Virus record (IMG/VR): IMGVR_UViG_3300044712_000810
Location: 62,001-126,000 of that record
Direction: 5' to 3' (one strand)
DNA length: 64,000 nt
Below the pieces are notes generated by a model, which did no database searches, had not been told where the DNA came from, and worked only from the letters and a program-made list of their open reading frames with translations. This document shows positions 2,509 through 45,907 of the stretch, piece after piece; position 1 is the first letter of the stretch, and each line of letters opens with the position of its first letter. Position numbers and translations under genes: made by a program.

Positions 2509-2523
2509 TTTTTTATAGAAATA
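2509..2523 (+). promoter_or_regulatory. 15-bp motif variant TTTTTTATAGAAATA
   Basis: Two mismatches; upstream of the plus-strand ORF at 2560. Confidence 0.5.
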
Positions 2524-2559
2524 GTTTAAATAAACCAAATACACGGGGGCACACATAGA

Positions 2560-2955
2560 GTGTTAAAAAATATTGCCATTTGTGAAAAAAATGAAAAATT
2601 TATATCAATAATACAAAAAAATGATCATATAAGCATATTAACATTTTTTGAAAAAATAAACGATTCATATATATGTGAAATGAAATTAAAACATAATGAA
2701 ATTTTCAAAGCACAACAAATAGTTAATGTTGTACCACACTTATGTGATTATGAAATAAAACACACACATGTATTATTCAGATTAAACATACCGGATGAAT
2801 TCTTTGAAAATTATAATAAAGGATATTTAAATATAAATGTCTATCAATATAAAGAAGACAATCAAGAATACGTTGATATAGATCCCGTTTCAATAATCGA
2901 GTATGAAAATGAAACACAGTCTATATCACTATTAAATGAATTTTGGGGCGGATAA
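2560..2955 (+). CDS. Hypothetical protein, counter-oriented
   Basis: 131-aa ORF with GTG start, upstream 15-bp motif variant (2509-2523) and downstream hairpin terminator. Confidence 0.6.
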   Translation: MLKNIAICEKNEKFISIIQKNDHISILTFFEKINDSYICEMKLKHNEIFKAQQIVNVVPHLCDYEIKHTHVLFRLNIPDEFFENYNKGYLNINVYQYKEDNQEYVDIDPVSIIEYENETQSISLLNEFWGG

Positions 2956-2971
2956 TTTCCGCCCCATTTTT
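2945..2971 (+). terminator. Rho-independent terminator
   Basis: GGGGCGGA-TAATT-TCCGCCCC followed by ATTTTT. Confidence 0.75.
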
Positions 2972-3503
2972 AGCCAATTACGGTAATATTTAATAACTTA
3001 CTTTTATTACTTATACTAATATCTATATATACAGTATACTCTGTATATGCACCCATAGAAATTGGTGTAATATCAACGCTATTTAAAACAACGTTAACAC
3101 CAAGATCCGCACTTATTACTAATAAAATCATTTGAATTTCAGCTTCAATCAACTGTTTTGATGATTCCGTATCTTTCGAATGCAAGTATTTCTTTAATAA
3201 TGTACCAATTGACGCATCGAAAGGATAATCACCTACCATTGTTTGGAAAAAATTCTTAATATACGTAATAACAGTTTCATCAACAGTCTTTAAAGCACGG
3301 AAATCACCATATTCAGAAATTTGTGGAACAATATCAAATACTAAATCGTAATTGATTTGTTTCAGTTTTTCAATATAATCCCGAATCAAATATTGGATCG
3401 GTGATGGAAGTTCATCTAACTCATACAAATTCCGATACGATTTGATAGATCTCGGGATTTGATCTAATATTTCTTTCGGTAGTTTCGAGATATCTACTTC
3501 CAT
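2970..3503 (-). CDS. Baseplate wedge subunit, gp25/GPW family
   Basis: MVGDYPFDASIGTLLKKYL matches the gp25 GExPFxPxFGxxLxxxL motif. Confidence 0.75.
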   Translation of the reverse strand: MEVDISKLPKEILDQIPRSIKSYRNLYELDELPSPIQYLIRDYIEKLKQINYDLVFDIVPQISEYGDFRALKTVDETVITYIKNFFQTMVGDYPFDASIGTLLKKYLHSKDTESSKQLIEAEIQMILLVISADLGVNVVLNSVDITPISMGAYTEYTVYIDISISNKSKLLNITVIG

Positions 3504-3504
3504 T

Positions 3505-3741
3505 TTATCCCGCCTTTTGACCTACCCGCCTTTTCTTCTCCATTTCCTTCTTTTCTTTGACCTTTGCATTATATTGCTTTAATACAACATCATTATAAAG
3601 TGGATAAGGAATATCTGCAATATTTACGAGATCAGCAGGATTGGTTTTATCAAATAAATTATGATCAGATAAAAACAATTCAGTAAAATACTTATAGGCT
3701 TTCGACGCCCTCTCCGGTATTAAAAATGCTTCTGCGAAAAA
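3505..3741 (-). CDS. Start-less 78-codon frame; probable frameshift extension of the upstream gene
   Basis: +1 frame opens just after a TAG at the TTT TTT C site. Encodes FAEAFLIPERASKAYKYFTELFLSDHNLFDKTNPADLVNIADIPYPLYNDVVLKQYNAKVKEKKEMEKKRRVGQKAG*, ending 2 nt before the gp25 ATG. Confidence 0.55.
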   Translation of the reverse strand, partial: FFAEAFLIPERASKAYKYFTELFLSDHNLFDKTNPADLVNIADIPYPLYNDVVLKQYNAKVKEKKEMEKKRRVGQKAG

Positions 3742-4600
3742 ATTCTAATTCAATATTCACCTCTCTGTCAAATTTGTGTTGACAAATTGGACATTCGATG
3801 GATGCATAAAACCGAGGATCATATTTTTTGAATCTTTCGGTGTACTTATTAAAATAAGTTTCAGAAACAGTTTTTGGAATGTATGAATCAAAAGCAATAG
3901 CAATTTCTTGCATACTTTCAGTTCTTACAAATTGATCACTACCTTTTGGTTTTAATACGATAGCACGAGTAAGAAGAGTCATTTGTTCATGAAGAGCAAA
4001 TAATGATCCACCCTGCTCCAGATTCTTTTGTAGCATATCGGTACTAAGCATTGATAGTACACGGTTATTATCTTTGATTGTTGGAATTCTAGTATCAAAT
4101 GAATATACATATTTATCATAATCAATATCAATCTGGAATGAATACTTTGTAAAGGGAACGGTTTCACCATTCTCATCAACTTCATCCCACATTGTAAGAG
4201 TATCATCATGAAGTAAATCTTCAGCTATGATTTCTTTTTCAAATTCTTGACGACATTCAGGATTTTCACAAATAATTTTGCGTTTTCCAAGTGTTTCATA
4301 TGTATTTCTATAGATGCCCCAAATTAAACAGATTTTATCGATGTTTGAAACTTCACTAATAAATCTATCAAAATTTGGTTTTTCATCTTTATCTTCATTA
4401 TTAAAGACCATATGCTTATGAAGCAATTTAATCATTTCTCTATCATAACCATGAGGATTAGTAATAGATGTTCTAAGTGCAAGATCGTCACCAACAACTA
4501 ATGGTGTAACCGTAGCTGCTTTACGAGCAATCGGTAATGGTACTTGCAGTTTTTTAATTTCCATAATATTTTTAGCTGTTTCTAAAAACTGTGAAAGCAT
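3692..4600 (-). CDS. Baseplate hub assembly protein / tail assembly chaperone (T4 gp26/gp51-like)
   Basis: VTPLVVGDDLAL, DKICLIWGIYRNTY, Cys pairs CENPEC and CPIC, and a C-terminal ELEFF motif. Confidence 0.65.
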   Translation of the reverse strand: MLSQFLETAKNIMEIKKLQVPLPIARKAATVTPLVVGDDLALRTSITNPHGYDREMIKLLHKHMVFNNEDKDEKPNFDRFISEVSNIDKICLIWGIYRNTYETLGKRKIICENPECRQEFEKEIIAEDLLHDDTLTMWDEVDENGETVPFTKYSFQIDIDYDKYVYSFDTRIPTIKDNNRVLSMLSTDMLQKNLEQGGSLFALHEQMTLLTRAIVLKPKGSDQFVRTESMQEIAIAFDSYIPKTVSETYFNKYTERFKKYDPRFYASIECPICQHKFDREVNIELEFFRRSIFNTGEGVESL

Positions 4601-4613
4601 TGTCCCTCCAAAC

Positions 4614-4907
4614 TTACATATTAGGCATGTTAATTGAATAATTAATCTTATTCATTGCGTGTTTAAAATTTTGCATTGATTTAATAGATTTTAATATCTC
4701 TAAAATTTGTATTGCTGGAATCTTTGCTACACTAATATATGTAGGTGGATCATTTGCTACGCGGACGAATCCACGTGCATATAAAAGATTATCAATGTCT
4801 GTAAGTAACATCCCAAAGACCTTACGGTCATGACCTTTTTTTGGTTCAAAAATTACTGTGGATGCCATATATTTTCCAACTTTAATAGGGAATGATATAT
4901 TGAACAC
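4614..4907 (-). CDS. Hypothetical protein
   Basis: 97-aa ORF co-oriented with neighbours. Confidence 0.6.
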   Translation of the reverse strand: MFNISFPIKVGKYMASTVIFEPKKGHDRKVFGMLLTDIDNLLYARGFVRVANDPPTYISVAKIPAIQILEILKSIKSMQNFKHAMNKINYSINMPNM

Positions 4908-4918
4908 ATAAAATCACG

Positions 4919-4944
4919 CCCAGGGGGCATTTCTACCCCCTGGG
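4919..4944 (-). terminator. Terminator hairpin after major capsid gene
   Basis: CCCAGGGGG-TAGAAATG-CCCCCTGGG on minus strand; U-tract weak. Confidence 0.6.
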
Positions 4945-4959
4945 CTTAGATCAACTTAA

Positions 4960-6510: not shown

Positions 6511-6546
6511 ATCTTTCCTCCGAAATAATTATAAGTATTTTTTTTA

Positions 6547-7648: not shown

Positions 7649-7649
7649 G

Positions 7650-10429: not shown

Positions 10430-10574
10430 AGTTCATTTTCCTCCAAAATATTTTTTGTGGATGTGATATTTTCCCAAATTACAAACCGACTCCCGTACCA
10501 TTAATAGTATAGGATTTTCGGTCTTATCATATACGTCATATCGTTTTTAGTATAGAAACTAAAGGGTTTAAAAA

Positions 10575-10599
10575 TGTTCCCAGGGGTTTCCTGGGAACA
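10575..10599 (-). terminator. Rho-independent terminator after helicase
   Basis: TGTTCCCAGG-AAACC-CCTGGGAACA followed by TTTTT on minus strand. Confidence 0.8.
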
Positions 10600-10604: not shown

Positions 10605-12404
10605 TTACACGTCAAATGACATATCATCACCAGCAAAAACATCAGTTACATCACTGAAACTCATTGCTGTAAGTGCGTCCAGTTCTTGTTCAAGCAATGC
10701 ACTCTTCTTTAAGATTGTAGGTGCATCTGCAAGATACTCACGAATATTATTATAAATCTTACAGTTGTCAGTGCAGAATAGTAGAAACTTTTGTGTGTCT
10801 TTACCAGTTTCTTTTGATTTAGTAATTTTAAGTTCAAATGGAATAAGAACTTTTCTATTAATAATGTCATCTTTAATTTTAAGTAATTCGGCACTAAGAC
10901 CATTAACTTCATCATAATCATTATGATCTAAAACGTTACGTCTAACTTGATCACTTAAGAAAGTTAAATCGTTACGCATACGACACATATAAACAAAGTC
11001 ACAATATCTGATTTTCTTATAACTGTCACCGATTTGTGAGTTATCTAATGAAATGCCAATGTTCTCACTTGTCTTAGCATTCTGTGATGCTGTGATTACA
11101 GGAATTTTAAAGTTTCTAGCAAGGTTACGTAATTCTTGAATAATAACACCTTGAGAATTATAGTCATCAAAGTTGGTATACTTAGACAATGTCGGAACTA
11201 ATGGATCAACATAGTCGATGAAAATTGCTTTAACTTTGAGTCCGTTAGTTTTAAGTAAATCAATCCAATGACCAATATCACCAGGTGAGAAGGTATTTTC
11301 ATTTTCGTGTCTTAAAATTAAATTGACTTTACCGTTTGTTACCTTTGCAACACTCGTTTGTAAAAGTCTATCAAATAAATTTTCAACAGTTGCGGCTGAA
11401 TACGCATCGTTATTCTTTGCTTGTTGGAATTCACGAGTACGGTTAAACAACTCACGACATAAGTTATAAGTATAGTCGCCAAATACTGAAATAAACTTAC
11501 GAACTAACTTATAGATATCGTCTTCTACTGTTAAATATAAAATCGCATCATCCTTATCAAACGTATCAATGTTATCACGAATAATGGTATGACAAAGATT
11601 TAAAAGTAAAGTTGATTTACCATTGTTTGATGGTGCTGTAATCATATGAATAGACGAAGATTCAAAACCACGAATACCAGTATCAAAAATCTCGAAACCA
11701 GTTTTGAAGAAACTATAATCGTCTTTTAAGTATGAAGAAATTGTTTTGGCCAAAGATCTACATGAATGTTTATCACTAATAGTAAACCAGTTACTTACAT
11801 TCTCTTTTTTATTTAAAGATTGTAATTTTGATAAATCGTTAAATTGATTAATAATATTTTCTTTATAAACTTTCATCGCTTCAAACAATGCGAGTTTACC
11901 ATCAGAAATCGACTCACACAATTCATCATTGAAAATAAGACCAGTCTTAATAGAACAAATCTCATAATATGCCTGAATTAATGATGCGATTTCATTTACA
12001 ACTTCTTTAAATTCAGTAACATTCTGAATTGGTTGTGTACATGCCAAATTTAAAAGATCTTTACTAGCAACAGATAATGTGTTTGATGCTACATACACAT
12101 TCACGTTTGAATAGTTAATAAGAGCTTTACTTTGACGAATGTTTAAAATCGTATTTGCTAAATTACAATAGTTGACAATGTTCTTTTCATTTTCAAGTTT
12201 ATACTTTCTACATACGTTGGCAAGATCCTTTAAAAATTCTTGAACATAAGAAATAAAATCCTGTTGATTATTAGTCAACACACCAAAGTTAGAAGGATAT
12301 AAACTTACTCGAATAAGATTAATAAAGAAGTCATTTGAAGCATGATACTTAATGAACGCTGTAAATAATGATTTATTCGTTTGTTTATTCGAAATCGTCA
12401 TCAT
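10605..12404 (-). CDS. Replicative DnaB-like helicase (T4 gp41-like)
   Basis: Walker A APSNNGKS, IFIDYVD, ELRNLARNFKIPVITASQ. ATG at 12404 follows a GGAGGGG RBS (track start 12422). Confidence 0.9.
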   Translation of the reverse strand: MMTISNKQTNKSLFTAFIKYHASNDFFINLIRVSLYPSNFGVLTNNQQDFISYVQEFLKDLANVCRKYKLENEKNIVNYCNLANTILNIRQSKALINYSNVNVYVASNTLSVASKDLLNLACTQPIQNVTEFKEVVNEIASLIQAYYEICSIKTGLIFNDELCESISDGKLALFEAMKVYKENIINQFNDLSKLQSLNKKENVSNWFTISDKHSCRSLAKTISSYLKDDYSFFKTGFEIFDTGIRGFESSSIHMITAPSNNGKSTLLLNLCHTIIRDNIDTFDKDDAILYLTVEDDIYKLVRKFISVFGDYTYNLCRELFNRTREFQQAKNNDAYSAATVENLFDRLLQTSVAKVTNGKVNLILRHENENTFSPGDIGHWIDLLKTNGLKVKAIFIDYVDPLVPTLSKYTNFDDYNSQGVIIQELRNLARNFKIPVITASQNAKTSENIGISLDNSQIGDSYKKIRYCDFVYMCRMRNDLTFLSDQVRRNVLDHNDYDEVNGLSAELLKIKDDIINRKVLIPFELKITKSKETGKDTQKFLLFCTDNCKIYNNIREYLADAPTILKKSALLEQELDALTAMSFSDVTDVFAGDDMSFDV

Positions 12405-12459
12405 TCGTTCCCCCTCCCACAAGGGCTAGATGTTTAAACTGTTTCATGGACACGGGTAT

Positions 12460-12474
12460 TATTTTTATATGAAA
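12460..12474 (-). promoter_or_regulatory. 15-bp motif variant TTTCATATAAAAATA upstream of helicase
   Basis: One mismatch to consensus; shares the upstream flank CTAG with the 40198 copy. Confidence 0.65.
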
Positions 12475-21403: not shown

Positions 21404-21439
21404 TGACTCCAGTCTCTAAAATAATTTAATATTCATTTT

Positions 21440-21454
21440 TTTCATATAGAAATA
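21440..21454 (+). promoter_or_regulatory. Conserved 15-bp motif TTTCATATAGAAATA
   Basis: Exact copy; also exact at 45893-45907 (+) and 40198-40212 (-). Confidence 0.7.
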
Positions 21455-21530
21455 TATAATTAGTAAGTAAGGATTTACATGAATTAGCAACTTAACCCTG
21501 CGATCAAGCAGGTCAAGGAGGCAAAACACC

Positions 21531-21995
21531 ATGGCCAAGAACGAAAACAAGAACGTTGAAGGACAGGAAAATCCCACCAACGCCCAGAAAATGGGCGCAA
21601 TGGTCGGAAGCTTCTGGACCAAGGTCAAGTCGTTCGACTACAAGAACATGTCGAACTACCAGTTCATGTGCGTCGGATTCCTCATCGGAATCTTGATGGT
21701 CGGCGGTCTGTTGACCTACAAGGTCTACACCGATCCCGAAAACTTCAGGCAGGACGCCGTAAAGGCGGCCAAGACCGGAACTGTGGAAATCACGGTATCT
21801 GGCAAGTCTCTGGACGTGGTCTACACCACTTCCAAGACGACTGAAAGCTGGAACAATCTGTCGACCGAACAGGCCGTAAAGGTCATTCGTGGCCTCAATC
21901 CGGCCAACGTGAAGATCAACGCCAAGGAATGGCCGTTGATCGGAACCACGGATTCGACAAAGCTGACGATCCAACAGATTCGCCAGCAACTGTAA
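21531..21995 (+). CDS. Single-pass membrane protein, counter-oriented, GC-richer codons
   Basis: AGGAGG RBS, TM helix FMCVGFLIGILMVGGLLTY, own upstream motif and terminator. Confidence 0.75.
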   Translation: MAKNENKNVEGQENPTNAQKMGAMVGSFWTKVKSFDYKNMSNYQFMCVGFLIGILMVGGLLTYKVYTDPENFRQDAVKAAKTGTVEITVSGKSLDVVYTTSKTTESWNNLSTEQAVKVIRGLNPANVKINAKEWPLIGTTDSTKLTIQQIRQQL

Positions 21996-21997
21996 CA

Positions 21998-22047
21998 GCG
22001 CCTGCGCAACCCAAGAAGGGGTGCGCAAGCGCCCTTTCTTTTTTTAT
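21998..22047 (+). terminator. Rho-independent terminator
   Basis: GCGC..TGCGCA.CCC-AAGAA-GGG.TGCGCA.GCGC followed by a T-rich tract. Confidence 0.7.
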
Positions 22048-33492: not shown

Positions 33493-34350
33493 TTATTTAC
33501 ACTTTAAACTACTAAATATAATTGTAAGTTCTTTGTCATCTATTTTATATATATCTTTATACTTAGTAAAAATATTATTCATAAGAGCACAAATTCTAGT
33601 CTTATCTTCAGGATGTTGTCTTGTAAAAACTAAATTAGCCATGGATGCAATCATTTTATATAGTAAACTTTCATTATGTTTCTTTTTACTTGCTTCAATT
33701 TCTAAATGAAATTTGAATAATACTTTTGCTAATTCGTCTCCATAACCATATTTCACTGCATAGTTATCAGCTTTATACTCGCCTGCATGTTCAAAAAATG
33801 TAAGCGTTCGACTAACAATCATTAAAGAACCGATCAAAAAAATTGCGCCTGGTAAATGAAACCAGTCTAAAACAAAATTGGAGGCCGCCCGAACTTTGTC
33901 GGACAGCCACCAGATATAATGTGCATAATTACCTGAATGTGCATACGCATGACCTAATTCATGTAATAGAATTGCGGTCATTTGACGCGATGAACATTTA
34001 TCAATTATTTTCTTACCGAAACAAATATATACAGAATCGATGTACTTAGATAAGTCGGCATCTGCTACTTGTAAATTTGCTTCAGGTTCTTTTTTCTGTT
34101 TTATTAATTTACCCATATCAAGAACAAATGTATTCTTATATATAGGTATAATCCATGAATCTGCTGTTGATTTTTTAACAAATACAACAACTTTTTCAAT
34201 ACCTGTAAATTCTTTAATATGTTGTACTAATTTATTTTTAGCATCAACGTCGCCAATATTAATTTTTAATTTATCGAAATCACCATCTATTTGTCTTAAA
34301 ATAGATGATCTTTCTTGTGCTACTTCTAATAAAATTTTATCATCATACAT
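33493..34350 (-). CDS. Zinc metallopeptidase, M48-like
   Basis: ILLHELGHAY (HExxH), EYKADNYA, RQHP..TRI. Likely start ATG 34350 after GGAG (track start 34458). Confidence 0.75.
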   Translation of the reverse strand: MYDDKILLEVAQERSSILRQIDGDFDKLKINIGDVDAKNKLVQHIKEFTGIEKVVVFVKKSTADSWIIPIYKNTFVLDMGKLIKQKKEPEANLQVADADLSKYIDSVYICFGKKIIDKCSSRQMTAILLHELGHAYAHSGNYAHYIWWLSDKVRAASNFVLDWFHLPGAIFLIGSLMIVSRTLTFFEHAGEYKADNYAVKYGYGDELAKVLFKFHLEIEASKKKHNESLLYKMIASMANLVFTRQHPEDKTRICALMNNIFTKYKDIYKIDDKELTIIFSSLKCK

Positions 34351-34363
34351 GATTATCTCCAAT

Positions 34364-35329
34364 TTATTTAACTGGACAATTCGAAGAATATAAACAAAAG
34401 AAACATGCTTTTTTATTAATAAAAGGATCTTGAGGAGATGGTATTTTATTATTATCAATATACCAATTGATACACTTTAACTTCTGGTCAATGAAATCCA
34501 TATATGGTTTCGGATCAAAAGTAGATAAGTCAAGTGTAAGACTTTTAATAAAGTAAAATGGATCTGACTTTGATGACAATGCCTTTTTAATAGTGGTTAC
34601 GGCCGCTAAAGCTTCACCAATATTTTCAACATCAGCAGCAATAATATCGTGTGCGATATATAAAAATTGAATTTTCTTAATATCGTATTTTTTATATTTT
34701 GGTTTTGGTGAACGCGTAACAATTTCAGGATTACGAATTTCATCAATATAATTTTCTAAAATGTATTTATAAACCATCGTTTGATAAAAGTCTGGAGTTC
34801 TAGGCTTTTGACTTCTTATAATGGATTCATAATCTTTATATGTACATGTTTTAATTTCAACCAACACGTCAGTACCAATTAAACAGTCAATACGACCACT
34901 GAAACGAACACTTGGAACTTTCATTGATACTTCTGTTTCTGTAAATTGATCTGTATTACATTGAATAAAATCATGAACAGCAGAACCGATTGTATTTCTC
35001 ATAAATATTGGAAGCCATTTATCTGCATAATTCTCAACAGGCACATTTAAAATTTTATTAACAATACTTAGGATGCAACCGTGGGCAACATCGTGACCAC
35101 TTATATTCGATGCAACTTCCATATACGCTTTGTTTTTGGCCTGAGATTTATGATATAATTCTCTTGAAAAATCTTTAATATCAAATAATGCACCACTTGG
35201 AAGATCATCAGATTCTTCCATCACCATCTGTTGTGATTGTTCCGGTGTTGCTGTATTTACAGATTTTTGTGTTGTGATGTTTTCATTTGTATTTTCAATA
35301 ATATCTAAAATTCCATTAAATTCACTCAA
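34364..35329 (-). CDS. Cas4-like PD-(D/E)XK exonuclease
   Basis: GC..GSAVH, GRID..LVEIKT, QTMVY, C-terminal CFFC-x5-C cysteine cluster. Confidence 0.75.
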   Translation of the reverse strand: MSEFNGILDIIENTNENITTQKSVNTATPEQSQQMVMEESDDLPSGALFDIKDFSRELYHKSQAKNKAYMEVASNISGHDVAHGCILSIVNKILNVPVENYADKWLPIFMRNTIGSAVHDFIQCNTDQFTETEVSMKVPSVRFSGRIDCLIGTDVLVEIKTCTYKDYESIIRSQKPRTPDFYQTMVYKYILENYIDEIRNPEIVTRSPKPKYKKYDIKKIQFLYIAHDIIAADVENIGEALAAVTTIKKALSSKSDPFYFIKSLTLDLSTFDPKPYMDFIDQKLKCINWYIDNNKIPSPQDPFINKKACFFCLYSSNCPVK

Positions 35330-35399
35330 AACGCGCCTCCAAAATCCGTTATGTATTTACTAAACTTATTTTTTTATAAAAGTAGAATTTTTTTGAAAT

Positions 35400-35425
35400 G
35401 GGGGAGGAAAATTCATTCCTCCCCC
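35400..35425 (-). terminator. Terminator-like hairpin
   Basis: GGGGGAGGAA / TTCCTCCCCC 10-bp stem. Confidence 0.6.
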
Positions 35426-35434: not shown

Positions 35435-35689
35435 TTATTTATGCTTTGGTGCAGCCTTTGGTGCCATTCCTGCTTGACCCATGGCAATCTTACGAGCAGC
35501 CATAAGTGCTTTAGAACTATACTTTTTCATAATAGCCATTTTAACAGTTAAGTATGCGCGACGAAGTTTTTGATATTTTGCGAGAAGTGGATCATTACTG
35601 CGAGCAGCAAGTTTAAGAGCAAGACCACCAACAAGTGCATTCAATTTAGCAGCGCGTGTACGCTTGTGCATAGTATCTCTAAGAGCCAT
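35435..35689 (-). CDS. Small basic hypothetical protein
   Basis: 84 aa, Lys/Arg/Ala-rich, GGAGG RBS. Confidence 0.7.
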   Translation of the reverse strand: MALRDTMHKRTRAAKLNALVGGLALKLAARSNDPLLAKYQKLRRAYLTVKMAIMKKYSSKALMAARKIAMGQAGMAPKAAPKHK

Positions 35690-36651: not shown

Positions 36652-37986
36652 TTATTCAAAAGGATTTTCATTACTTTCAACAGTATCTGTATCATTGTCT
36701 ATATCAACGAATGAATCAGATGTATCTGCACCATCAGTACAGTCGCACTGACTTACATTTACAGTTTCTGCGCTAAACCAACCTTCTTTGATTCGTTTAT
36801 GTACCGAAATATTAACGGCATAATCAAACCATTGACGGAAAGTCTCACTTGTTTCATAAAGATGTTTTGCATCTTTCCTATAAAATGAATCAGAAGTAAA
36901 TGCGATTTCACCCGTTTGAACATTTGGAACTTCAAGATAATATCTTGAACCGTTCTTTTTAACGAGAAGCGGATAAGTAGTTTTACCAAAAAGTTTTTCT
37001 TCGGTATAAGTTGCTTCTGAAAGGAATATAAATTCGCTCCAAAACTTATCAATTCCTGTCTTTTTATCAAAGACACAACGAACTGTAAATTTTGAAGGCG
37101 CATGTTTATTCTTTTCTGTATAGATATCAAGATACCAACCATCAATTCCAAGTCCATCAATAGGAGCAATTGCTTTCTTTTTACTCAAGAATAGCCATTG
37201 CGCAAGTCTATGATTTAATGCCGCAATTGAACTTGCCGCTTTAAAATCTTTAAAGGCACCAACAGATTTTTCTTTCTGTACATATGGTCCTTCAATAGAT
37301 ATATTTGCACGGACTTGATCGATTGCGAGGAATGTAATTCTTTTATGGGCAAGTAATGGTGCATATTTTTCTAGACAGAATGTTAACTGTCTAGCCTTAG
37401 TACCAACAAGTTTCTGTGCTTCTTCGGCTTCTTCAACTTTGCTACTAGGGGTTGCAGCAATACTATCCCAAATAATCATGACATAGAATTGTGTTCCTGT
37501 CTTCTGTTCAAATGCATCTTTAATTTGTGCTAAACGTTCAATAAGTTTAAACACGTTAGGTACATCGAATATAATAGGTTCATATTTAAATCTATTAGCA
37601 TCAAGTCCAAATGATTCAATGCGTGATATTTGGAATTCTTTACTCTCACTTGAATTACCAGAACCTTCAATATCAATATAAACAACAACGCCGTTTTGAT
37701 ATTGATTCAAAAATGCTTTACTAAATTGAAAAGCAAATGTTGATTTGCCTGTTTCTGGTGTGCTGGAAATCATAACTGGTGCCGATGAAATAATACCACC
37801 ACCAAGAATTGCATCCAAATGGCGAATTCCAGTTGGAGTTAAAATTGGTGAAGGAGCAATATAGTCACCATATTCTTGCGAAATAATCGCTTGAAATGCC
37901 TGACCTAATTTCTCGGCATGTTCTGTAGTTCCAGTATCAAATGTAGATGATTTAATAGTATCATTCGATGTTTTTTTGCGAGCCAT
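36652..37986 (-). CDS. uvsX: RecA/UvsX-like recombinase
   Basis: PTGIRHLDAILGGG, Walker A STPETGKS, IIWDSIAATP, AIDQVR, YTEKNK. Confidence 0.85.
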   Translation of the reverse strand: MARKKTSNDTIKSSTFDTGTTEHAEKLGQAFQAIISQEYGDYIAPSPILTPTGIRHLDAILGGGIISSAPVMISSTPETGKSTFAFQFSKAFLNQYQNGVVVYIDIEGSGNSSESKEFQISRIESFGLDANRFKYEPIIFDVPNVFKLIERLAQIKDAFEQKTGTQFYVMIIWDSIAATPSSKVEEAEEAQKLVGTKARQLTFCLEKYAPLLAHKRITFLAIDQVRANISIEGPYVQKEKSVGAFKDFKAASSIAALNHRLAQWLFLSKKKAIAPIDGLGIDGWYLDIYTEKNKHAPSKFTVRCVFDKKTGIDKFWSEFIFLSEATYTEEKLFGKTTYPLLVKKNGSRYYLEVPNVQTGEIAFTSDSFYRKDAKHLYETSETFRQWFDYAVNISVHKRIKEGWFSAETVNVSQCDCTDGADTSDSFVDIDNDTDTVESNENPFE

Positions 37987-40152: not shown

Positions 40153-40197
40153 AGGTGTCTCCTATTGGTTAAAATTTTACTTCCATCCCAATTGCAC

Positions 40198-40212
40198 TAT
40201 TTCTATATGAAA
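40198..40212 (-). promoter_or_regulatory. Conserved 15-bp motif TTTCATATAGAAATA
   Basis: Exact copy on minus strand, about 45 bp upstream of the 40152 start. Confidence 0.7.
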
Positions 40213-40223
40213 CTAGAGAAAAT

Positions 40224-40850
40224 TTACTTTCTGTTAAATCTTACTAATAAATCCTTATTAAATTTTTTACCCATATTGAAAAAATACGTCCTTTGAAATA
40301 CTCCAGATGGAATTTTAAAATATCGTATGAATGGCGAAATACAATATTTACCAATGGCTTCGTATGTTCTCTTGGTATAAATATCCAAGTTACTGTCACC
40401 AACAATGACAATATGTATACACTCGGACACATCAACAATATTTTCGTAAAGAAATTTATTAACTTCAGCATCTTGTTCGATTACATTTCTATTTTTTAAT
40501 TCAACATTGGTTAATGGAAATTTCATATCAATAGGTCTCGTATTAAATACATAATATCTATCTTCAACTAATTCTACCGTGAAATGCCAAGGAAGCATAT
40601 TATGTTCAAACTGACCATATAACTCACGATATCGTTGATTAATTTCATGCAAATCTATTCTATGAGTATCTATTCTAGGCTTTGGTCTAATTGGAAACGC
40701 GAAATGATTATAGGAGTCCGATATAATTAAGCCTTTTGGTTTAGTATCTATTTTATTAATAACGCTAGAATCATCTTTACTTATACTAATTCGTTGCTGT
40801 CCAGCTTCATCAGCAAAGAAATTGTTAATATCTTCATACATTACAAGCAT
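40224..40850 (-). CDS. Amidase_2 (T7 lysozyme-like) fold protein, probably catalytically degenerate
   Basis: PWHFTV..YVFNTRP..CIHIVIVGD..TKRTYEAI parallels GYHFVI..GRP..SIGICLVG..TxAQ; first Zn-ligand His replaced (IISDS). ATG 40850 follows GGAG. Confidence 0.5.
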   Translation of the reverse strand: MLVMYEDINNFFADEAGQQRISISKDDSSVINKIDTKPKGLIISDSYNHFAFPIRPKPRIDTHRIDLHEINQRYRELYGQFEHNMLPWHFTVELVEDRYYVFNTRPIDMKFPLTNVELKNRNVIEQDAEVNKFLYENIVDVSECIHIVIVGDSNLDIYTKRTYEAIGKYCISPFIRYFKIPSGVFQRTYFFNMGKKFNKDLLVRFNRK

Positions 40851-40964
40851 GTTCGGCTCCAATAAAAAGTTGGAAGGTCAAATTACAGAAATCCAATAAA
40901 CAATTATATTATAAGGCAAACTTAAACTGTGGGCATTCCACAAAATCTTTGACCTTCCCACAAA

Positions 40965-41141: not shown

Positions 41142-41142
41142 A

Positions 41143-41361
41143 TTAATGCTCTTCTATTTTATGACTATGTACATGTTTAGCTAATTTAGCTAAAGCTCTC
41201 ATATGACCATTAAGTTGTTCTTTAGACATCTTATGACCATGTAATTGAATTCTTTTATTAATTCCATTAACTAAATTTCTTGCACTATTTGGATGTAACA
41301 CACGCTCAAATATCAGACCACTATTAATGGCAGTTTCTAATAAGGTCATAATGACCTCCAT
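41143..41361 (-). CDS. Hypothetical protein
   Basis: 72-aa ORF abutting neighbours. Confidence 0.55.
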   Translation of the reverse strand: MEVIMTLLETAINSGLIFERVLHPNSARNLVNGINKRIQLHGHKMSKEQLNGHMRALAKLAKHVHSHKIEEH

Positions 41362-41978: not shown

Positions 41979-42682
41979 AGACCATGAATTAAAATACCTA
42001 GCTTATAACCTGTATATTTTTTATTTTCATCTTTAGGATATTTATCATAATAATATTTCTGTATAAGTGTGGTTGTCGCATGTAAACCAACAGCTAAAAG
42101 TCTAGCAACTGTTGCTGTTACAATATCCATTCCAGCACCTAATAATCTAACCATATACATAGAAAATTCAGCAACGTTAAATACAACAAAAAATGTACCT
42201 GTAAAACCACCTTGAATAGATATCATCTTTGCTGTTTCTTCAGTTAATGGTGCAACAAATATTGAACCCATAGCATAACCTAACGACGGTGGTAAGCCAA
42301 TTATCATACAAACAACAGCAAGAAAATTATGAAGAAATGTATTTATGATTAAAATAATAGAAAGTAAAACTAATGATTTTCCAATTTTATTAAATGCAAC
42401 TTCAATACTAGATTCTTGAACTGCCGCTTGAAAATTTCGTTTTAATATAATACCAATATCGGCTTTATCTTTTGATTGTTTAAATTCAACAACAGCACGT
42501 TTAGAATATTTCTTAGCAATATTCTCAAGTTTGGAAGTTTCAACATTTCCATCTTTTAACTGTTGTGTTATTTTTTTAATTTTATTATCTTTCTGTTCAA
42601 TTAATGATTCTTTAAATGAACCAATTGAAAACGATTCAAGAAAAAGTTCATTAGTATACATATTTTTGGCGACCGAATACAT
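41948..42682 (-). CDS. PrsW-family (CPBP-type) intramembrane protease
   Basis: Four family motifs in order: APLTEETAK (EExxK), FNVAE (FxxxE), LHATT (H), IHGLWN (HxxxN); several TM helices. Confidence 0.7.
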   Translation of the reverse strand: MYSVAKNMYTNELFLESFSIGSFKESLIEQKDNKIKKITQQLKDGNVETSKLENIAKKYSKRAVVEFKQSKDKADIGIILKRNFQAAVQESSIEVAFNKIGKSLVLLSIILIINTFLHNFLAVVCMIIGLPPSLGYAMGSIFVAPLTEETAKMISIQGGFTGTFFVVFNVAEFSMYMVRLLGAGMDIVTATVARLLAVGLHATTTLIQKYYYDKYPKDENKKYTGYKLGILIHGLWNFMAVMGH

Positions 42683-42697
42683 TTTTTAACTTTCTCC

Positions 42698-42714
42698 AAT
42701 TTGATATACAAATT
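42698..42714 (+). promoter_or_regulatory. Dyad AATTTG-ATATA-CAAATT, compensatory variant of the 15-bp motif
   Basis: C>G and G>C changes keep the symmetry; upstream of the plus-strand ORF at 42737. Confidence 0.5.
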
Positions 42715-42736
42715 AGTTATTAAAGGAGGTAATAAC

Positions 42737-42862
42737 ATGTTACGATCTGCAATACAAGCGGTCATTGCGTTAATCGTCATATGTACACTTATCTACATGA
42801 TAAATGAAAACCCAATCATACAATGGATAATAAATCAAATATCCAAGATTGGGCAGTTTTAA
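42737..42862 (+). CDS. 41-aa membrane peptide (not in ORF track)
   Basis: AAAGGAGG RBS; MLRSAIQAVIALIVICTLIYMINENPIIQWIINQISKIGQF*; terminator directly after. Confidence 0.7.
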   Translation: MLRSAIQAVIALIVICTLIYMINENPIIQWIINQISKIGQF

Positions 42863-42866
42863 AAAG

Positions 42867-42888
42867 AATGGGGGCTTTCGCCCCCATT
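42867..42888. terminator. Bidirectional terminator
   Basis: AATGGGGGC-TTTC-GCCCCCATT with T-tracts on both strands. Confidence 0.8.
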
Positions 42889-42894
42889 TTAATA

Positions 42895-43095
42895 TTAATC
42901 AAACTTTGTTTTACCAAATGATCCTAAGATTGCTTTTTGTGGAGGATTAAATCTTCCCATTTCAACCCCAGGAGGCATCTTCTTTTTAAGACTTGAAGGC
43001 ACACCATCAGATGATGCGCCACCAATTGGTGCTTTCGCAAAATCAGCTGATGTATCTTCGTCTAAGTAATATAATTGTTCGAAGATACTTAACAT
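42895..43095 (-). CDS. Hypothetical protein
   Basis: 66-aa ORF. Confidence 0.55.
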   Translation of the reverse strand: MLSIFEQLYYLDEDTSADFAKAPIGGASSDGVPSSLKKKMPPGVEMGRFNPPQKAILGSFGKTKFD

Positions 43096-43099
43096 AACA

Positions 43100-43384
43100 T
43101 TAGAACTTTACGTTTTCTTGGCTGATTGAATTATCAACCTTTGTGTTTGTTGCGCCTGGACTTGACTTTGCCCATGAATTTGTATTAGGAATTCCATCAG
43201 TTGTTGAAGCAACATTCAAAGATGTTTTAAGAACTTGATCAAGAGCTGATTGAACGTTTCCGTCAAGTTTACCTTTTTGACCTTTGTTTTCAGTACCCAT
43301 ATCAATTGTGGTACCTTCGGCTTCTGTAACTACTTCTTCGAATTCACCTGCAAAAATGTTTGATACACTTAACATTTCATACAC
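43100..43384 (-). CDS. Hypothetical protein
   Basis: 94-aa ORF. Confidence 0.6.
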   Translation of the reverse strand: MYEMLSVSNIFAGEFEEVVTEAEGTTIDMGTENKGQKGKLDGNVQSALDQVLKTSLNVASTTDGIPNTNSWAKSSPGATNTKVDNSISQENVKF

Positions 43385-43404
43385 TCCGTTATTTATTTTG
43401 TTTA

Positions 43405-44514
43405 TTAAAGTCTGTCAGTTGTTATTGGAAGATTTGAAAACCAAGCCTGTTCAAAAATACCATAAATGAACTTAGTCTCTGGACGTACATAATATGTTCC
43501 AGCAAGAGGACCATCAACAACAACTTTATAGTATGCTGTTACACTTGGACCTTTCGCTTCGAAAAGAATTGATTTAACAAAAGCACCGTTATTATAAACA
43601 GCACGATCAAAAACAATCTTCCATTCTTTTGTGAACTTAAATGTATTGTCAGCAAATGTCATTGGAATAATTCCAATGATATCAAGTGAATTAAATGTTT
43701 CAGGATGAACTGTTTCAATTTCTGTATTTACGAATACAAAACTTGCAGATGTTACTGCATTTGTTTTTACATAATTCATAAACCAGTCATATTCAACAAT
43801 TGGAGTAGGAGCACCAACTGCTTCTGCAACTTCAAATTCGAATGCAGCAAACATGTCAATACTTACAGCATCGCCTGATTCGGCAACTGCAGAAACTTTA
43901 ATATCTGTTTTAGAAGCAAATTCTAATGGAACATCAAAAGATAGAATTTGTGATCCAGGAGCATTAGTGAAAATACTACGAATTGTTTTAAATGAACCAC
44001 CAACTTCACGTGCTTCAAGTTTTACATTAACATTGGTTGCAGCGGCATTGTTTGCATAAACTTCAAGTTTCTTAAGTTTACCAACAAATCCATCAGGAAT
44101 TGTTACAACACCTACTTTTGATTCCGTATCACCAATGGCGATAACTGACTTAATAAGACTTGCAGTTTGTGGAACGCCAGCAGTTAAAGTGTCAGTGCTA
44201 TCAAATACATAAACAGTACCAGCACATGGCGCAGAAACTTTTACATCATTAATTCTGAAAAACTTATTAACTGTCTTAACTAATGTCTGACCGTTAAGAA
44301 TAACTTTTTCAGTGATTGGGTTAAAGAATAAACCAGTACCGACGATTTCAACGATTTGTGTTTTGTCTGTGGCCGAAGAGCTAGTTACACCTAACACAGT
44401 TTCTGTTGGAAGAAATGTGTAGGTATCAGCTGGTGAACCACTAATGTCTTTTGCTACATCGGCAATAGCTGATTTACTACCAGACACGGCAACATTAAAA
44501 AAAGTTCTTGGCAT
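43405..44514 (-). CDS. Beta-rich probable virion protein
   Basis: Thr/Val/Ala-rich; likely ATG 44514 after GGAGGA (track start 44529). Confidence 0.6.
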   Translation of the reverse strand: MPRTFFNVAVSGSKSAIADVAKDISGSPADTYTFLPTETVLGVTSSSATDKTQIVEIVGTGLFFNPITEKVILNGQTLVKTVNKFFRINDVKVSAPCAGTVYVFDSTDTLTAGVPQTASLIKSVIAIGDTESKVGVVTIPDGFVGKLKKLEVYANNAAATNVNVKLEAREVGGSFKTIRSIFTNAPGSQILSFDVPLEFASKTDIKVSAVAESGDAVSIDMFAAFEFEVAEAVGAPTPIVEYDWFMNYVKTNAVTSASFVFVNTEIETVHPETFNSLDIIGIIPMTFADNTFKFTKEWKIVFDRAVYNNGAFVKSILFEAKGPSVTAYYKVVVDGPLAGTYYVRPETKFIYGIFEQAWFSNLPITTDRL

Positions 44515-44535
44515 TATAATATCCTCCAAAGATAT

Positions 44536-45498
44536 TTACTGAATTGATGAAGTATCAAATTTGATACTTTCTACATATTTTTTCATAATTTCCTCAACGC
44601 CATTATGAATTTCCTCATTAACCAAACAGTCCTTACTAAAGATACTAAATGGATATTTGGTTGTTACGACTAAACCAATTAATTGATCTAATGGTCCAGT
44701 AAAACAATAAAAACCAGAAGTTTTTAATGTTCTTAAAAGACTTAAAATTATTTGATTTGGATTTTCAATTAATGCTCTTGTATCAATAAACATTTTTGGA
44801 ATATCTTTAATATCGTTATATCTTTCCAAATCATCCATTCTAGGTTCAAATTCTTCATATACTTCTAACATCTTAATTGTTTTAAAATGATCATGAATTA
44901 CTTTCTTAATATACGCATGTTTTTCTTTTAAGAAATGTTTATAATAAGCATACATACAAACAATATTTATAAACATTTTTTGTTTTTGATTGTATACTGT
45001 TGTTTTACCAATAGATTTCATAAACATTAAATAAATATATGTACTTAATAACTTATGTAAATCTTTATCTTGTCTTATCTTTTCTTTATTTAATATCGTT
45101 GCGGCTCTCATAAGTCCAAAATAAGACGAATATATACAATCATCTATCTTTGATGAATGACCATCGCGAATATTAATTTCAAGATCGGCAGAATCTAAAA
45201 TGATACCAACAAGTTTATCTTTGTCATATGCAACTCTAACAAAAACGCCATCATCTTTAATAGTTGAAATACCAATATAAATCTGATTTTTATTATATAA
45301 ATCAGAAACATAATGTTTTACATTATTGTTTGGTAGTTTACTTAAATAAAGATGAAAGTCTTCATTAAAATTATCATATACATGCTTATTAGTATCAGTC
45401 TTTTTAAAAATTACGATTTTAATTTCCTTCTCGCTTAACACTCGATTCATTGAACTGTCTGAAAAATATAATGGAGGAAATTTAGTTTCATCACTCAT
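44536..45498 (-). CDS. Hypothetical protein
   Basis: 320-aa ORF. Confidence 0.7.
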   Translation of the reverse strand: MSDETKFPPLYFSDSSMNRVLSEKEIKIVIFKKTDTNKHVYDNFNEDFHLYLSKLPNNNVKHYVSDLYNKNQIYIGISTIKDDGVFVRVAYDKDKLVGIILDSADLEINIRDGHSSKIDDCIYSSYFGLMRAATILNKEKIRQDKDLHKLLSTYIYLMFMKSIGKTTVYNQKQKMFINIVCMYAYYKHFLKEKHAYIKKVIHDHFKTIKMLEVYEEFEPRMDDLERYNDIKDIPKMFIDTRALIENPNQIILSLLRTLKTSGFYCFTGPLDQLIGLVVTTKYPFSIFSKDCLVNEEIHNGVEEIMKKYVESIKFDTSSIQ

Positions 45499-45512
45499 AT
45501 GAACATCTCCCT

Positions 45513-45875
45513 TTAAGTACTACTCATTGATAACACTTTATATATTATATCCTCATTAGGAGTTATAATCAATCTTTTATAAAAGTTCTCAGAAGTAAAT
45601 TCAAAGATACTATTTATATTATTAACGGTAAGTATAACAGGATAAAAATATTGTTCGCCATAAATATCCTGACAAAACTCATGTGGGCGCATAACCCACC
45701 GATCATTATCAAACAATTCATATTTACACTGTTGAATAAGCAATTGTTTGTTATTAAAAAACACATTATCAAATATCGGTTTTTTATATTCCAAAAAAAT
45801 ATTTTTTACATCATACGTTTGTCCTGAAAAAAATTGAAACAAATCGGTTGTTCTTGTTTCCATTTTAAATCTCAC
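45513..45875 (-). CDS. Baseplate wedge protein (T4 gp53-like, LysM-type)
   Basis: RPHEFCQDIYGEQYFYPVILTVNNI matches RPDxIAxxLYGDxxLYWVILxxNNI. Confidence 0.7.
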   Translation of the reverse strand: MRFKMETRTTDLFQFFSGQTYDVKNIFLEYKKPIFDNVFFNNKQLLIQQCKYELFDNDRWVMRPHEFCQDIYGEQYFYPVILTVNNINSIFEFTSENFYKRLIITPNEDIIYKVLSMSST

Positions 45876-45892
45876 AATTTAATATTTTAAAT

Positions 45893-45907
45893 TTTCATAT
45901 AGAAATA
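45893..45907 (+). promoter_or_regulatory. Conserved 15-bp motif TTTCATATAGAAATA
   Basis: Exact copy upstream of the AAA gene. Confidence 0.7.

What the first reader, a model, noticed from the sequence alone, without database searches (positions are those of the whole stretch)
2509..45907. 15-bp dyad motif TTTC-ATATA-GAAA-TA marks every counter-oriented gene plus two non-structural genes
Seen: exact copies at 21440 (+), 45893 (+) and 40198 (-); variants at 12460 (-, 1 mismatch), 2509 (+, 2 mismatches) and 42700 (+, TTTG-ATATA-CAAA with symmetric compensatory changes). All are intergenic, about 20-80 bp upstream and co-oriented with the downstream gene. They precede all four plus-strand units, the helicase and the 425-aa gene, and I noticed none in front of a recognised structural gene. 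Inference: a phage-specific early/middle promoter or a dimeric-regulator operator defining a regulon.
Basis: partly seen in the sequence, partly recalled or inferred. Interest (0 to 1): 0.7.

Follow-up and report, generated by a model that had tools for sequence, protein, structure and literature searches.

The report
Early promoter of a jumbo phage
The 15-base motif is the core of a one-directional, roughly 40-bp promoter used about 90 times in a 315-kb uncultivated jumbo phage that encodes two RNA polymerases of its own; this is expected for such phages, and the motif is not a symmetric repressor site.

Summary
The window is part of a 314,837-bp jumbo phage genome from a rhizosphere metagenome. 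TTTCATATAGAAATA occurs 52 times at up to 1 mismatch, against 1 for the reversed control. A 42-nt weight matrix finds about 90 sites and none in shuffled genomes.

The full element is wwTTTTwATwTTy-N5-TTTCATATAGAAATA-nT-N6-R. It is directional: 76 of 90 sites have an SD+ORF or a tRNA within 200 nt downstream. About half the sites follow a terminator hairpin, and tRNA 5' ends never lie closer than motif position 25.

The dyad reading fails. Of 71 sites that vary at positions 4 or 10, only 5 stay complementary.

The same motif recurs in four related phage contigs. In those, it sits at matching positions before the ATPase/VWA pair, the helicase and the 425-aa gene.

The genome encodes a virion-type and a non-virion-type multisubunit RNA polymerase. 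I found no sigma factor. Orthologues of motif-bearing genes in Bacillus phage AR9 have annotated early promoters.

Best reading: this is the early promoter read by the injected virion polymerase, a new member of a known kind. Timing, start site and the reading enzyme are inferred, because no RNA data exist. Sites 2509 and 12460 lack the upstream box and may form a weaker or later subclass.

The parts
21422..21463 (+). Full bipartite promoter: upstream box 21422-21434, core 21440-21454, predicted start near 21463. It drives the 154-aa gene 21531-21995.
   Evidence: Matrix score 37.8 bits, box +13.1. The gene has AAGGAGG 8 nt before its ATG. The gene is absent from relative G001, so it is a cassette inserted next to the terminase gene.
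21998..22045 (+). Terminator hairpin plus T run that closes the 21531-21995 cassette.
   Evidence: Fold energy -23.6 kcal/mol, followed by TTTCTTTTTTT.
45875..45916 (+). Full bipartite promoter: box 45875-45887, core 45893-45907, predicted start near 45916. It drives the AAA ATPase (45969-47204) and the metallopeptidase/VWA protein (47213-48553).
   Evidence: Score 38.6 bits. The promoter is kept at the same place in G001, G006 and G007. The same gene pair in AR9 (g028/g029) has an annotated early promoter. Protein families.
48560..48589 (+). Terminator closing the ATPase/VWA unit.
   Evidence: 8-bp stem with 7 G-C pairs, then CATTTTTTTT.
40189..40230 (-). Promoter with a weak upstream box: core 40198-40212, predicted start near 40189. 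It drives the 425-aa gene and probably the operon down to the UvsX-like recombinase (36652-37986) and the 84-aa gene at 35435-35689.
   Evidence: Score 36.3 bits, box +7.6. The 425-aa orthologue in G007 has TTTTATATAGAAATA 25 nt upstream, and G001 has AAATATATAGAAATT. UvsX assignment.
35400..35425 (-). Terminator hairpin that probably ends the 425-aa/UvsX unit.
   Evidence: GGGGGAGGAA...TTCCTCCCCC followed by ATTT, read directly from the sequence.
35367..35381 (-). Degenerate copy TTTTATAAAAAAATA (3 mismatches), right after the terminator and upstream of the 321-aa gene 34364-35329.
   Evidence: The orthologous gap in G001 holds a terminator followed by a scoring promoter, TTATATATAGAAATT, at 24.7 bits.
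42682..42723 (+). Bipartite promoter with a weaker core TTTGATATACAAATT (42700-42714). It drives a 41-aa hydrophobic ORF at 42737-42862.
   Evidence: Score 23.7 bits, box +12.5, core 14.1. AGGAGG and ATG follow. A terminator lies at 42867-42888.
12451..12474 (-). Core-only promoter TTTCATATAAAAATA (12460-12474) with no distal box. It drives the DnaB-like helicase 10605-12422.
   Evidence: Core 19.1 bits, box -25.2. Boxless copies sit at the same place before the helicase in G001 and G006. Helicase assignment.
10571..10598 (-). Terminator after the helicase gene, which makes it a single-gene unit.
   Evidence: GTTCCCAGG...CCTGGGAAC followed by ATTTTT, read directly from the sequence.
2509..2532 (+). 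Core-only site TTTTTTATAGAAATA. It precedes the counter-oriented 131-aa gene 2560-2955. This is the weakest of the six sites.
   Evidence: Core 13.2 bits, box -19.6. G001 has a boxless ATTTATATAGAAATG before a counter-oriented, weakly similar gene at the same position (blastp E 2e-5). A two-way terminator lies at 2944-2966.
33697..33711 (-). Match with 2 mismatches inside an ORF; probably chance.
   Evidence: Inside ORF 33493-34458, box score -29.4, total -20.3 bits.
61666..61680 (-). Match with 1 mismatch inside an ORF; probably chance.
   Evidence: Inside ORF 61298-62620, box score -16.5, total 0.4 bits.

Best explanation
The motif is the core of the phage's own early-class promoter. The full element spans about 42 bp. 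It has an AT-rich upstream box (wwTTTTwATwTTy, about -41 to -29), a 5-bp spacer, the core TTTCATATAGAAATA (about -23 to -9, with ATATAGAAAT nearly invariant), a T near -7, and a purine start 6 nt further on.

Proposed mechanism, by analogy with phiKZ, AR9 and phiR1-37: a multisubunit RNA polymerase packed in the virion enters with the DNA and starts transcription at these roughly 90 sites without host sigma factors. These sites express replication and recombination genes, nucleotide metabolism genes, tRNAs, small accessory genes and the second (non-virion) polymerase. The second polymerase then reads the late structural genes, which have no recognisable shared motif.

Inside the long minus-strand late block covered by the window, every gene that needs early expression carries its own promoter. 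Most are closed by their own terminator. That is why the motif 'marks' the counter-oriented genes, the helicase and the 425-aa/UvsX operon.

Shown: it is a directional, genome-wide, clade-conserved promoter-type element, and the phage encodes two polymerase sets.
For: Abundance:
- 52 hits at up to 1 mismatch, against 1 for the reversed control.
- About 90 matrix sites with a bimodal score distribution, and 0 in Markov shuffles at 14 bits or more.

Anatomy:
- A second conserved box lies 5 nt upstream, and position 24 is a purine in 86% of sites.

Direction:
- 76 of 90 sites have an SD+ORF or tRNA within 200 nt downstream. The figure is 22 of 90 in the opposite direction and 13% at random positions.
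- The start codon is never closer than 9 nt to the predicted start.
- tRNA 5' ends lie at motif positions 25, 26, 29, 34 and 38, never closer.

Insulation:
- 47% of sites follow a hairpin of -12 kcal/mol or stronger, against 5% of controls.
- The window's plus-strand units are promoter-gene-terminator cassettes.

Conservation:
- Relative G001 shares 100 reciprocal best hits at a mean 41% amino-acid identity. It has 39 hits at up to 1 mismatch and 65 exact copies of ATATAGAAAT.
- Three fragments with about 50% terminase identity have 2-4 hits each. A 31%-identity relative has none above control.
- Promoters sit at matching positions before orthologues (odds ratio 21.5, p 3.5e-4).

Polymerases:
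- There are two beta and two beta' homologues and no Sigma70_r2 match.
- Set A's beta'N matches the AR9 virion subunit g145 at 6e-28, against 5e-11 for the non-virion subunit. Set B matches the AR9 non-virion subunits g089 and g154.

Class:
- The non-virion beta gene lies behind the motif: 1.2 kb downstream after two small genes in G000, as in AR9, and 63 nt downstream in G001. An enzyme that is present before phage protein synthesis must therefore read the motif.
- AR9 orthologues of motif-bearing genes have annotated early promoters. These are gyrB g024, the ATPase/VWA pair g028-g029, DNA polymerase g132 and nvRNAP g089.
- Orthologues of AR9 late genes (sheath, portal, protease, terminase) lack the motif.

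Literature:
- Every two-polymerase jumbo phage has such an AT-rich motif near -10 of its early operons, with the start about 6 nt downstream (PMC7598289, PMC5312081).
- The phiKZ early motif also has a T-rich part upstream of -19 (PMC8244752).
Against: - There is no transcript evidence. The only RNA-labelled run holds two reads and is probably DNA.
- The virion-type beta'N gene (genome 302167-303468) lies about 400 nt downstream of three strong copies. Under the simple model virion-polymerase genes should be late, though structured leaders with terminator-like hairpins intervene.
- Ninety sites is two to three times the number of early promoters in AR9 (41) or phiKZ (28-32). The set may therefore mix early and middle classes.
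- Two window sites lack the upstream box.
- The host is unknown, so a host holoenzyme or an unrecognised phage sigma-like factor is not excluded.
- The assignment of set A as virion-type rests mainly on one subunit at about 28% identity.
Confidence: 0.7

Rival explanations
1. The motif is an early promoter read by the host RNA polymerase holoenzyme, with or without a small phage-encoded specificity factor, as for T4 early or middle promoters.
For: Positions 12-17 (AATAnT) would lie at -12 to -7. They keep the A at -11 and the T at -7 that are critical in sigma-70-type -10 elements. The AT-rich upstream box could act like an UP element. The host is unknown. T4 early promoters are also far more conserved than the plain sigma-70 consensus (general knowledge).
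Against: No TTGACA-like hexamer lies 16-18 bp upstream. None of the window sites is picked up in the right orientation by the sigma-70 scan, and sigma-70-like matches are not enriched (73 against 79.8 +/- 9.7, and 73 against 62.9 +/- 6.6). No Sigma70_r2 domain is encoded. The phage carries a virion-type polymerase set, which would then have no obvious role. An exact 10-15-mer kept across phages at 41% protein identity fits a phage-encoded reader better.
Confidence: 0.15
2. The motif is the promoter of the non-virion polymerase (a middle class), and true immediate-early promoters are something else not yet seen.
For: The roughly 90 sites are more than the known early sets of AR9 and phiKZ. Copies lie upstream of a virion-type polymerase gene. 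Boxed and boxless subclasses exist.
Against: The non-virion beta and beta' genes themselves lie behind the motif in two genomes, so their first expression cannot depend on their own product. No other over-represented upstream motif was found. In studied phages the motif that can be predicted bioinformatically is always the early one, and middle and late motifs are not predictable (PMC7598289).
Confidence: 0.1
3. The motif is the operator of a dimeric phage regulator that binds the TTTC-N5-GAAA dyad and defines a regulon.
For: The consensus contains a 4+4 inverted repeat. One site (42700) has G and C at positions 4 and 10, which keeps the symmetry.
Against: The left arm is variable: T at position 1 in 64 of 90 sites and C at position 4 in 47 of 90. 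The right arm GAAA is invariant except for G10. Only 5 of 49 (G000) and 0 of 22 (G001) sites that vary at positions 4 or 10 remain complementary. The centre CATATAG is not palindromic. The flanks are asymmetric: the box lies on one side only. Orientation tracks the downstream gene.
Confidence: 0.03

Closest known systems
Early (virion RNA polymerase) promoters of Bacillus phage AR9/PBS1: AAATATATATTAT-(6N)-G+1
   Same: - The genome has two multisubunit polymerase sets whose subunits are the best database matches to this phage's.
- Both have a long, nearly invariant AT-rich core.
- The start lies about 6 nt after the last conserved T. AR9's value is taken from PMC5312081; here it is inferred.
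- Copies sit before the same orthologous genes: gyrB, the AAA ATPase/VWA pair, DNA polymerase and nvRNAP beta.
- Copies face away from late genes such as the terminase gene.
- A subset of AR9 sites also has an upstream box, CGTATTAAA.
   Different: - The sequence is different.
- The upstream box is near-universal here: 81 of 94 core sites.
- There are about 90 sites against 41.
- Protein identity to AR9 is only 21-29%.
- No experimental start sites, timing or virion proteome exist for this phage.
phiKZ early promoters (vRNAP; extended -10-like AT-rich box plus a T-rich tract upstream of -19)
   Same: Bipartite layout with a T-rich upstream part. Expression is independent of host sigma factors. 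The two-polymerase strategy is the same (PMC8244752, PMC7598289).
   Different: - The consensus is different.
- phiKZ has 28-32 sites.
- This phage's terminase is T4-like at 25% identity or less, and its polymerase subunits are closer to the AR9, Staphylococcus and Listeria jumbo phages than to phiKZ.
Promoters of single-subunit phage polymerases (T7, SP6 type)
   Same: A long, nearly invariant, directional, phage-specific promoter repeated many times, often just after a terminator.
   Different: No T7-like polymerase gene was detected, though that search had no positive control. No unassigned ORF of 800 aa or more remains apart from one 993-aa protein in the structural block. Here the conserved block ends about 7-9 nt before the start, rather than running through it.
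Palindromic operators of dimeric phage repressors
   Same: The consensus holds a short inverted repeat, TTTC/GAAA.
   Different: There is no covariation between the arms, the flanks are asymmetric, and the function depends on orientation.

Membership tests
Jumbo-phage vRNAP early promoter (phiKZ/AR9 type) | The genome encodes two sets of split beta/beta' multisubunit RNA polymerase genes, one virion-type and one non-virion-type. | tested here: met
   Two Rpb2_6 and two Rpb1_2 loci, plus a third beta'-C piece. Set A's beta'N matches AR9 virion g145 best, and set B matches AR9 non-virion g089/g154.
Jumbo-phage vRNAP early promoter (phiKZ/AR9 type) | A highly conserved AT-rich motif of 10 nt or more, over-represented upstream of operons and oriented with them. 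| tested here: met
   52 hits against 1 for the control. About 90 matrix sites against 0 in shuffles. 76 of 90 have a gene or tRNA downstream.
Jumbo-phage vRNAP early promoter (phiKZ/AR9 type) | The motif is centred near -10, with the transcription start about 6 nt downstream of its last conserved base. | tested here: inconclusive
   Indirect only. A purine is enriched (86%) 6 nt after the conserved T at position 17. tRNA 5' ends lie at position 25 or beyond. Start codons lie at position 33 or beyond. No RNA 5' ends are available.
Jumbo-phage vRNAP early promoter (phiKZ/AR9 type) | The non-virion polymerase genes and replication genes lie behind the motif, and structural genes do not. | tested here: met
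   nvRNAP beta and beta', gyrB, DNA polymerase, helicase, the UvsX operon, RNR and tRNAs lie behind it. Terminase, portal, protease, sheath and tail genes do not. Exception: the virion-type beta'N gene lies downstream of three copies.
Jumbo-phage vRNAP early promoter (phiKZ/AR9 type) | Transcription is early and independent of new protein synthesis and of host RNA polymerase, and the polymerase is present in virions. | not testable with these tools
   The phage is uncultivated and known only from a rhizosphere metagenome. There is no transcriptome or virion proteome.
Host sigma-70/sigma-A promoter | TTGACA-like -35 and TATAAT-like -10 hexamers, 16-18 bp apart. | tested here: not met
   The consensus has no TTGACA-like hexamer at the required spacing. 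The sites are not among the co-oriented sigma-70-like matches, and such matches are not enriched.
Operator of a dimeric regulator | Two-fold symmetric half-sites that are equally conserved and covary; function independent of orientation. | tested here: not met
   The arms are unequally conserved. Only 5 of 49 and 0 of 22 variant sites stay complementary. There is a strong orientation bias.
T7-type single-subunit polymerase promoter | The phage encodes a T7-like single-subunit RNA polymerase. | tested here: inconclusive
   PF00940 found nothing, but it also failed to match any control genome. Among ORFs of 800 aa or more, only the 993-aa protein has no assignment, and it lies in the structural block.

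The most novel reading that the evidence does not exclude
This is a previously undescribed clade of soil and wastewater jumbo phages. It is only 21-29% identical to AR9-type phages, and its terminase is T4-like. The clade has kept one and the same ~42-bp two-part promoter across genomes that have diverged to about 41% protein identity. It uses two conserved grades of that promoter: with the distal AT box (most early units) and without it (helicase, the 425-aa/UvsX operon, and one counter-oriented gene). The grades would act as a built-in timing or strength switch, so the distal box would be a separable recognition module for a sigma-less virion polymerase.
Probability: 0.25. Interest if true: 0.5.

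Novelty: new member of a known kind. Interest (0 to 1): 0.3.

Why it matters
How the sigma-less virion polymerases of jumbo phages recognise promoters is still unsolved. The AR9 authors call recognition by the split beta/beta' core alone 'unprecedented' (PMC5312081).

This phage clade offers an unusually information-rich, two-part promoter. It provides about 90 natural variants in one genome and dozens more in four related genomes. It also offers a natural comparison of boxed and boxless forms at orthologous genes. That is useful raw material for in-vitro promoter dissection and for annotating transcription units in uncultivated huge phages.

For the genome scan itself, the finding is an expected feature of this phage type rather than a new kind of system.

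Tried and rejected
1. Dyad or operator reading: rejected by the covariation counts.
2. Chance or AT-rich composition: rejected by shuffles and the reversed control.
3. RNA evidence: two run searches and one read layout. Only DNA runs hold the phage, and the one RNA-labelled run has two reads, so no start sites could be mapped.
4. Megablast of 12 kb against GenBank phages: no match. Terminase as a single query against IMG/VR: no relative. Relatives came only from the exact-motif scan and from an alignment query.
5. Search for a late-gene promoter. K-mer enrichment in motif-free upstream regions gave only terminator stems and SD words. TATAAT-like words in five late gaps of this genome are not kept in G001.
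6. Simple transcription-unit tracing without terminators over-extends units and was dropped.
7. Matrix-to-matrix comparison with AR9 early promoters anchored on the start site. The best score is at zero offset, but the AT periodicity makes this weak evidence.
8. Literature search for ATATAGAAAT: 49 papers hold the string, and none of the 15 listed concerns a phage promoter.
9. Pfam and PHROGs on the 425-aa, 154-aa, 131-aa and several neighbouring proteins: no significant or informative matches (only a sub-threshold DUF7614 hit for the 131-aa protein).

Full report
**What the window is.** The window is bases 62001-126000 of a 314,837-bp viral record with 33% G+C. It was assembled from a rhizosphere metagenome. 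Its 127-bp 'terminal repeat' is short enough to be an assembly overlap of a circular or permuted genome. The window covers most of a long minus-strand block. That block holds a T4-like terminase, a portal, a prohead protease, a capsid-like protein, tail proteins and a 1809-aa tail/lysozyme protein. It also holds a DnaB-like helicase and a UvsX-like recombinase.

**The observation.** The window has 7 matches at up to 2 mismatches against 1.43 expected, and no shuffle reaches 7. Two further matches (33697, 61666) lie inside ORFs. The six listed sites are intergenic and point at the next gene. They precede the four plus-strand units, the helicase and the 425-aa gene, and none precedes a recognisable structural gene.

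**Genome-wide picture.**
- The 15-mer occurs 52 times at up to 1 mismatch (43 forward, 9 reverse). The reversed-sequence control gives 1.
- Aligning the sites shows a second conserved block 5 nt upstream, wwTTTTwATwTTy. It also shows a T two bases after the core and a purine in 86% of sites at motif position 24.
- A 42-nt weight matrix gives a cleanly bimodal score distribution. About 90 sites score 16 bits or more, and first-order Markov genomes give none at 14 bits or more.
- Direction matters. In the motif's direction, 76 of 90 sites have an SD plus ORF of at least 30 aa, or a tRNA, within 200 nt. The figure is 22 of 90 in the other direction and 13% at random positions.
- The median distance from position 24 to the start codon is 25.5 nt, and it is never below 9 nt.
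- Six tRNA genes lie directly behind a site. Five have their 5' ends at positions 25, 26, 29, 34 and 38; the sixth is 95 nt away. None is closer than position 25.
- Almost half the sites sit just after a stable hairpin: 47% at -12 kcal/mol or stronger, against 5% of random controls.
- Each of the window's plus-strand units is closed by its own terminator.

Together these are the properties of a promoter whose start lies about 9 nt after the 15-mer.

**The dyad.** TTTC-N5-GAAA is a real inverted repeat in the consensus, but it is not selected as one. The right arm is invariant, whereas the left arm varies: T1 occurs in 64 of 90 sites and C4 in 47 of 90. Among sites that differ from C4/G10, 5 of 49 in this genome and 0 of 22 in the relative stay complementary. 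The G...C pair at 42700 is the only one of its kind among 90 sites. The nearly invariant part is ATATAGAAAT (positions 5-14), with 74 exact copies here and 65 in the relative.

**The six window sites are not equal.** Sites 21440, 45893 and 40198 are full promoters (36-39 bits). Site 42700 has a good box and a weaker core (23.7 bits). Sites 2509 and 12460 have the core only, with box scores of -20 and -25 bits. A seventh, degenerate copy (TTTTATAAAAAAATA, 35367-35381, minus strand) follows a terminator. It corresponds in position to a scoring promoter in the relative.

**Relatives.** An exact-match scan of IMG/VR returned mostly single chance hits, but one 285,572-bp contig (G001) appeared twice.
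- G001 holds 39 matches at up to 1 mismatch against 0 for the control.
- It is collinear with this genome but distant. Only 8% of the genome aligns at the DNA level, at about 66% identity. There are 100 reciprocal best protein hits at a mean 41% identity.
- A terminase alignment found three more fragments at about 50% identity, with 2-4 motif copies each. It also found a 272-kb genome at 31% identity that has no copies above control.
- Positions are conserved. The promoter before the AAA ATPase and metallopeptidase/VWA pair is present in G000, G001, G006 and G007.
- The boxless promoter before the helicase is present in G000, G001 and G006.
- The promoter before the 425-aa gene is present in G000 and G007, and as a variant in G001.
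- Over all orthologue pairs, having a promoter within 300 nt upstream is shared far more often than chance predicts (odds ratio 21.5, p 3.5e-4).
- The 154-aa gene at 21531-21995 is absent from G001, so it is an inserted cassette that carries its own promoter and terminator.

**Which enzyme reads it.** The genome has two Rpb2_6 (beta) loci and two Rpb1_2 (beta') loci, plus a further beta'-C piece. There is no Sigma70_r2 match. The T7-type model also found nothing, but that model matched none of the control genomes. Best database matches are the polymerase subunits of AR9/PBS1 and of the Staphylococcus, Listeria and Yersinia jumbo phages, at 24-28% identity. Against AR9's annotated subunits, set A's beta'N matches virion subunit g145 at 6e-28, against 5e-11 for the non-virion one. 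Set B matches the non-virion subunits g089 and g154.

The non-virion beta gene lies behind the motif in both genomes. In G000 two small genes come first, exactly as in AR9. An enzyme that exists before phage proteins are made must therefore read the motif: either the injected virion polymerase or the host enzyme.

The host option is weaker. There is no -35-like hexamer, and the sites are not detected as sigma-70-like. Sigma-70-like matches are not enriched. An exact core kept across such diverged phages also fits a co-inherited reader better.

**Timing by orthology.** AR9's record annotates early promoters directly before gyrB (g024), the AAA ATPase/VWA pair (g028/g029), DNA polymerase (g132), nvRNAP beta (g087-g089) and nvRNAP beta' (g154). 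Its DnaB helicase (g007) lies in an early operon. Its sheath, portal, protease and terminase genes have no early promoter. In this genome the orthologues show the same split. AR9 also has an early promoter facing away from its terminase gene, as at 21440 here.

The literature states that every two-polymerase jumbo phage has such a motif and that, wherever tested, it is the early promoter. It also states that the start lies 6 nt after the motif and that middle and late promoters cannot be predicted from sequence (PMC7598289, PMC5312081). The phiKZ early motif has a T-rich upstream part as well (PMC8244752). Consistent with this, I found no shared motif for the late genes.

**Caveats.**
- No transcript data exist, so the start site, the timing and the reading enzyme are all inferred.
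- Three strong copies lie upstream of the virion-type beta'N gene. Each is followed by a structured GC-rich leader with a terminator-like hairpin. This may mean attenuation, separate small RNAs, or simply that this gene is also made early.
- Ninety sites exceed the early sets of AR9 and phiKZ, so the set may include a delayed class.
- The boxless sites before the helicase and the 425-aa/UvsX operon are conserved in form across genomes. They are the best candidates for such a class.

**Verdict.** It is the phage's own early-type promoter, not a dimer operator. It is a new example, in a new and distant clade, of a known kind of element.

Noticed in passing
Outside the window: genome 301352-302000 (L126:2353-2975): Three tandem copies of the promoter, each followed by a 120-200-nt GC-rich, strongly structured non-coding stretch and a hairpin plus T run. 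Fold z-scores are -3.9 and -6.3, and there is no Rfam family. The third runs into a 54-aa zinc-ribbon ORF and the virion-type beta'N gene. These may be phage small RNAs or attenuating leaders.
   Followed up: partly
window 12460-12474 (-), 2509-2523 (+), 40198-40212 (-); L232, L236; G001rc 197666, 185044: A boxless form of the promoter (TTCTAn directly before TTTTATATAGAAATA, no distal AT box). It is kept before the helicase and the 425-aa/UvsX operon in several clade members, whereas the ATPase/VWA promoter keeps the box in all four genomes. This may be a weaker or later promoter grade.
   Followed up: partly
window 45969-48553 (+): A 45% G+C island in a roughly 30% G+C region. It holds an AAA ATPase and a DUF2201 metallopeptidase/VWA protein. 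The same pair is conserved in AR9 (g028/g029) and in every clade member seen, always with its own early-type promoter.
   Followed up: partly
Outside the window: genome 290747-290821: ARAGORN calls a tRNA with anticodon CTA (an amber suppressor, printed as tRNA-Pyl) within an array of 27 tRNA genes at 275-296 kb. Several of these tRNAs sit directly behind motif promoters. Coding density under code 11 is 93.5%, so there is no sign of TAG recoding.
   Followed up: no
window 35367-35381 (-): A degenerate promoter copy, TTTTATAAAAAAATA, right after a terminator and upstream of a 321-aa gene with a weak nuclease-like PHROG match. The orthologous gap in G001 has a scoring promoter.
   Followed up: partly
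G001 (reverse complement) 194347-197382, orthologous to window 10605-12422: The helicase orthologue in the relative appears as three consecutive ORFs (328, 267 and 296 aa) instead of one 605-aa gene. This may reflect an insertion such as a homing element or intein, or a sequencing break.
   Followed up: no
window 42737-42862 (+): A 41-aa hydrophobic ORF forms a minimal promoter-gene-terminator cassette, antisense to the surrounding block. The predicted 5' UTR is only about 14 nt.
   Followed up: no
whole genome ends: The 'direct terminal repeat' is only 127 bp, which looks like an assembly overlap. The polymerase set A genes at 302-314 kb and 1-6 kb are then one contiguous region.
   Followed up: no
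AR9 record, loci L144-L146: About a third of AR9's annotated early promoters share CGTATTAAA roughly 10 nt upstream of the 13-mer core. AR9 may therefore have an upstream box in a subset of sites too.
   Followed up: no
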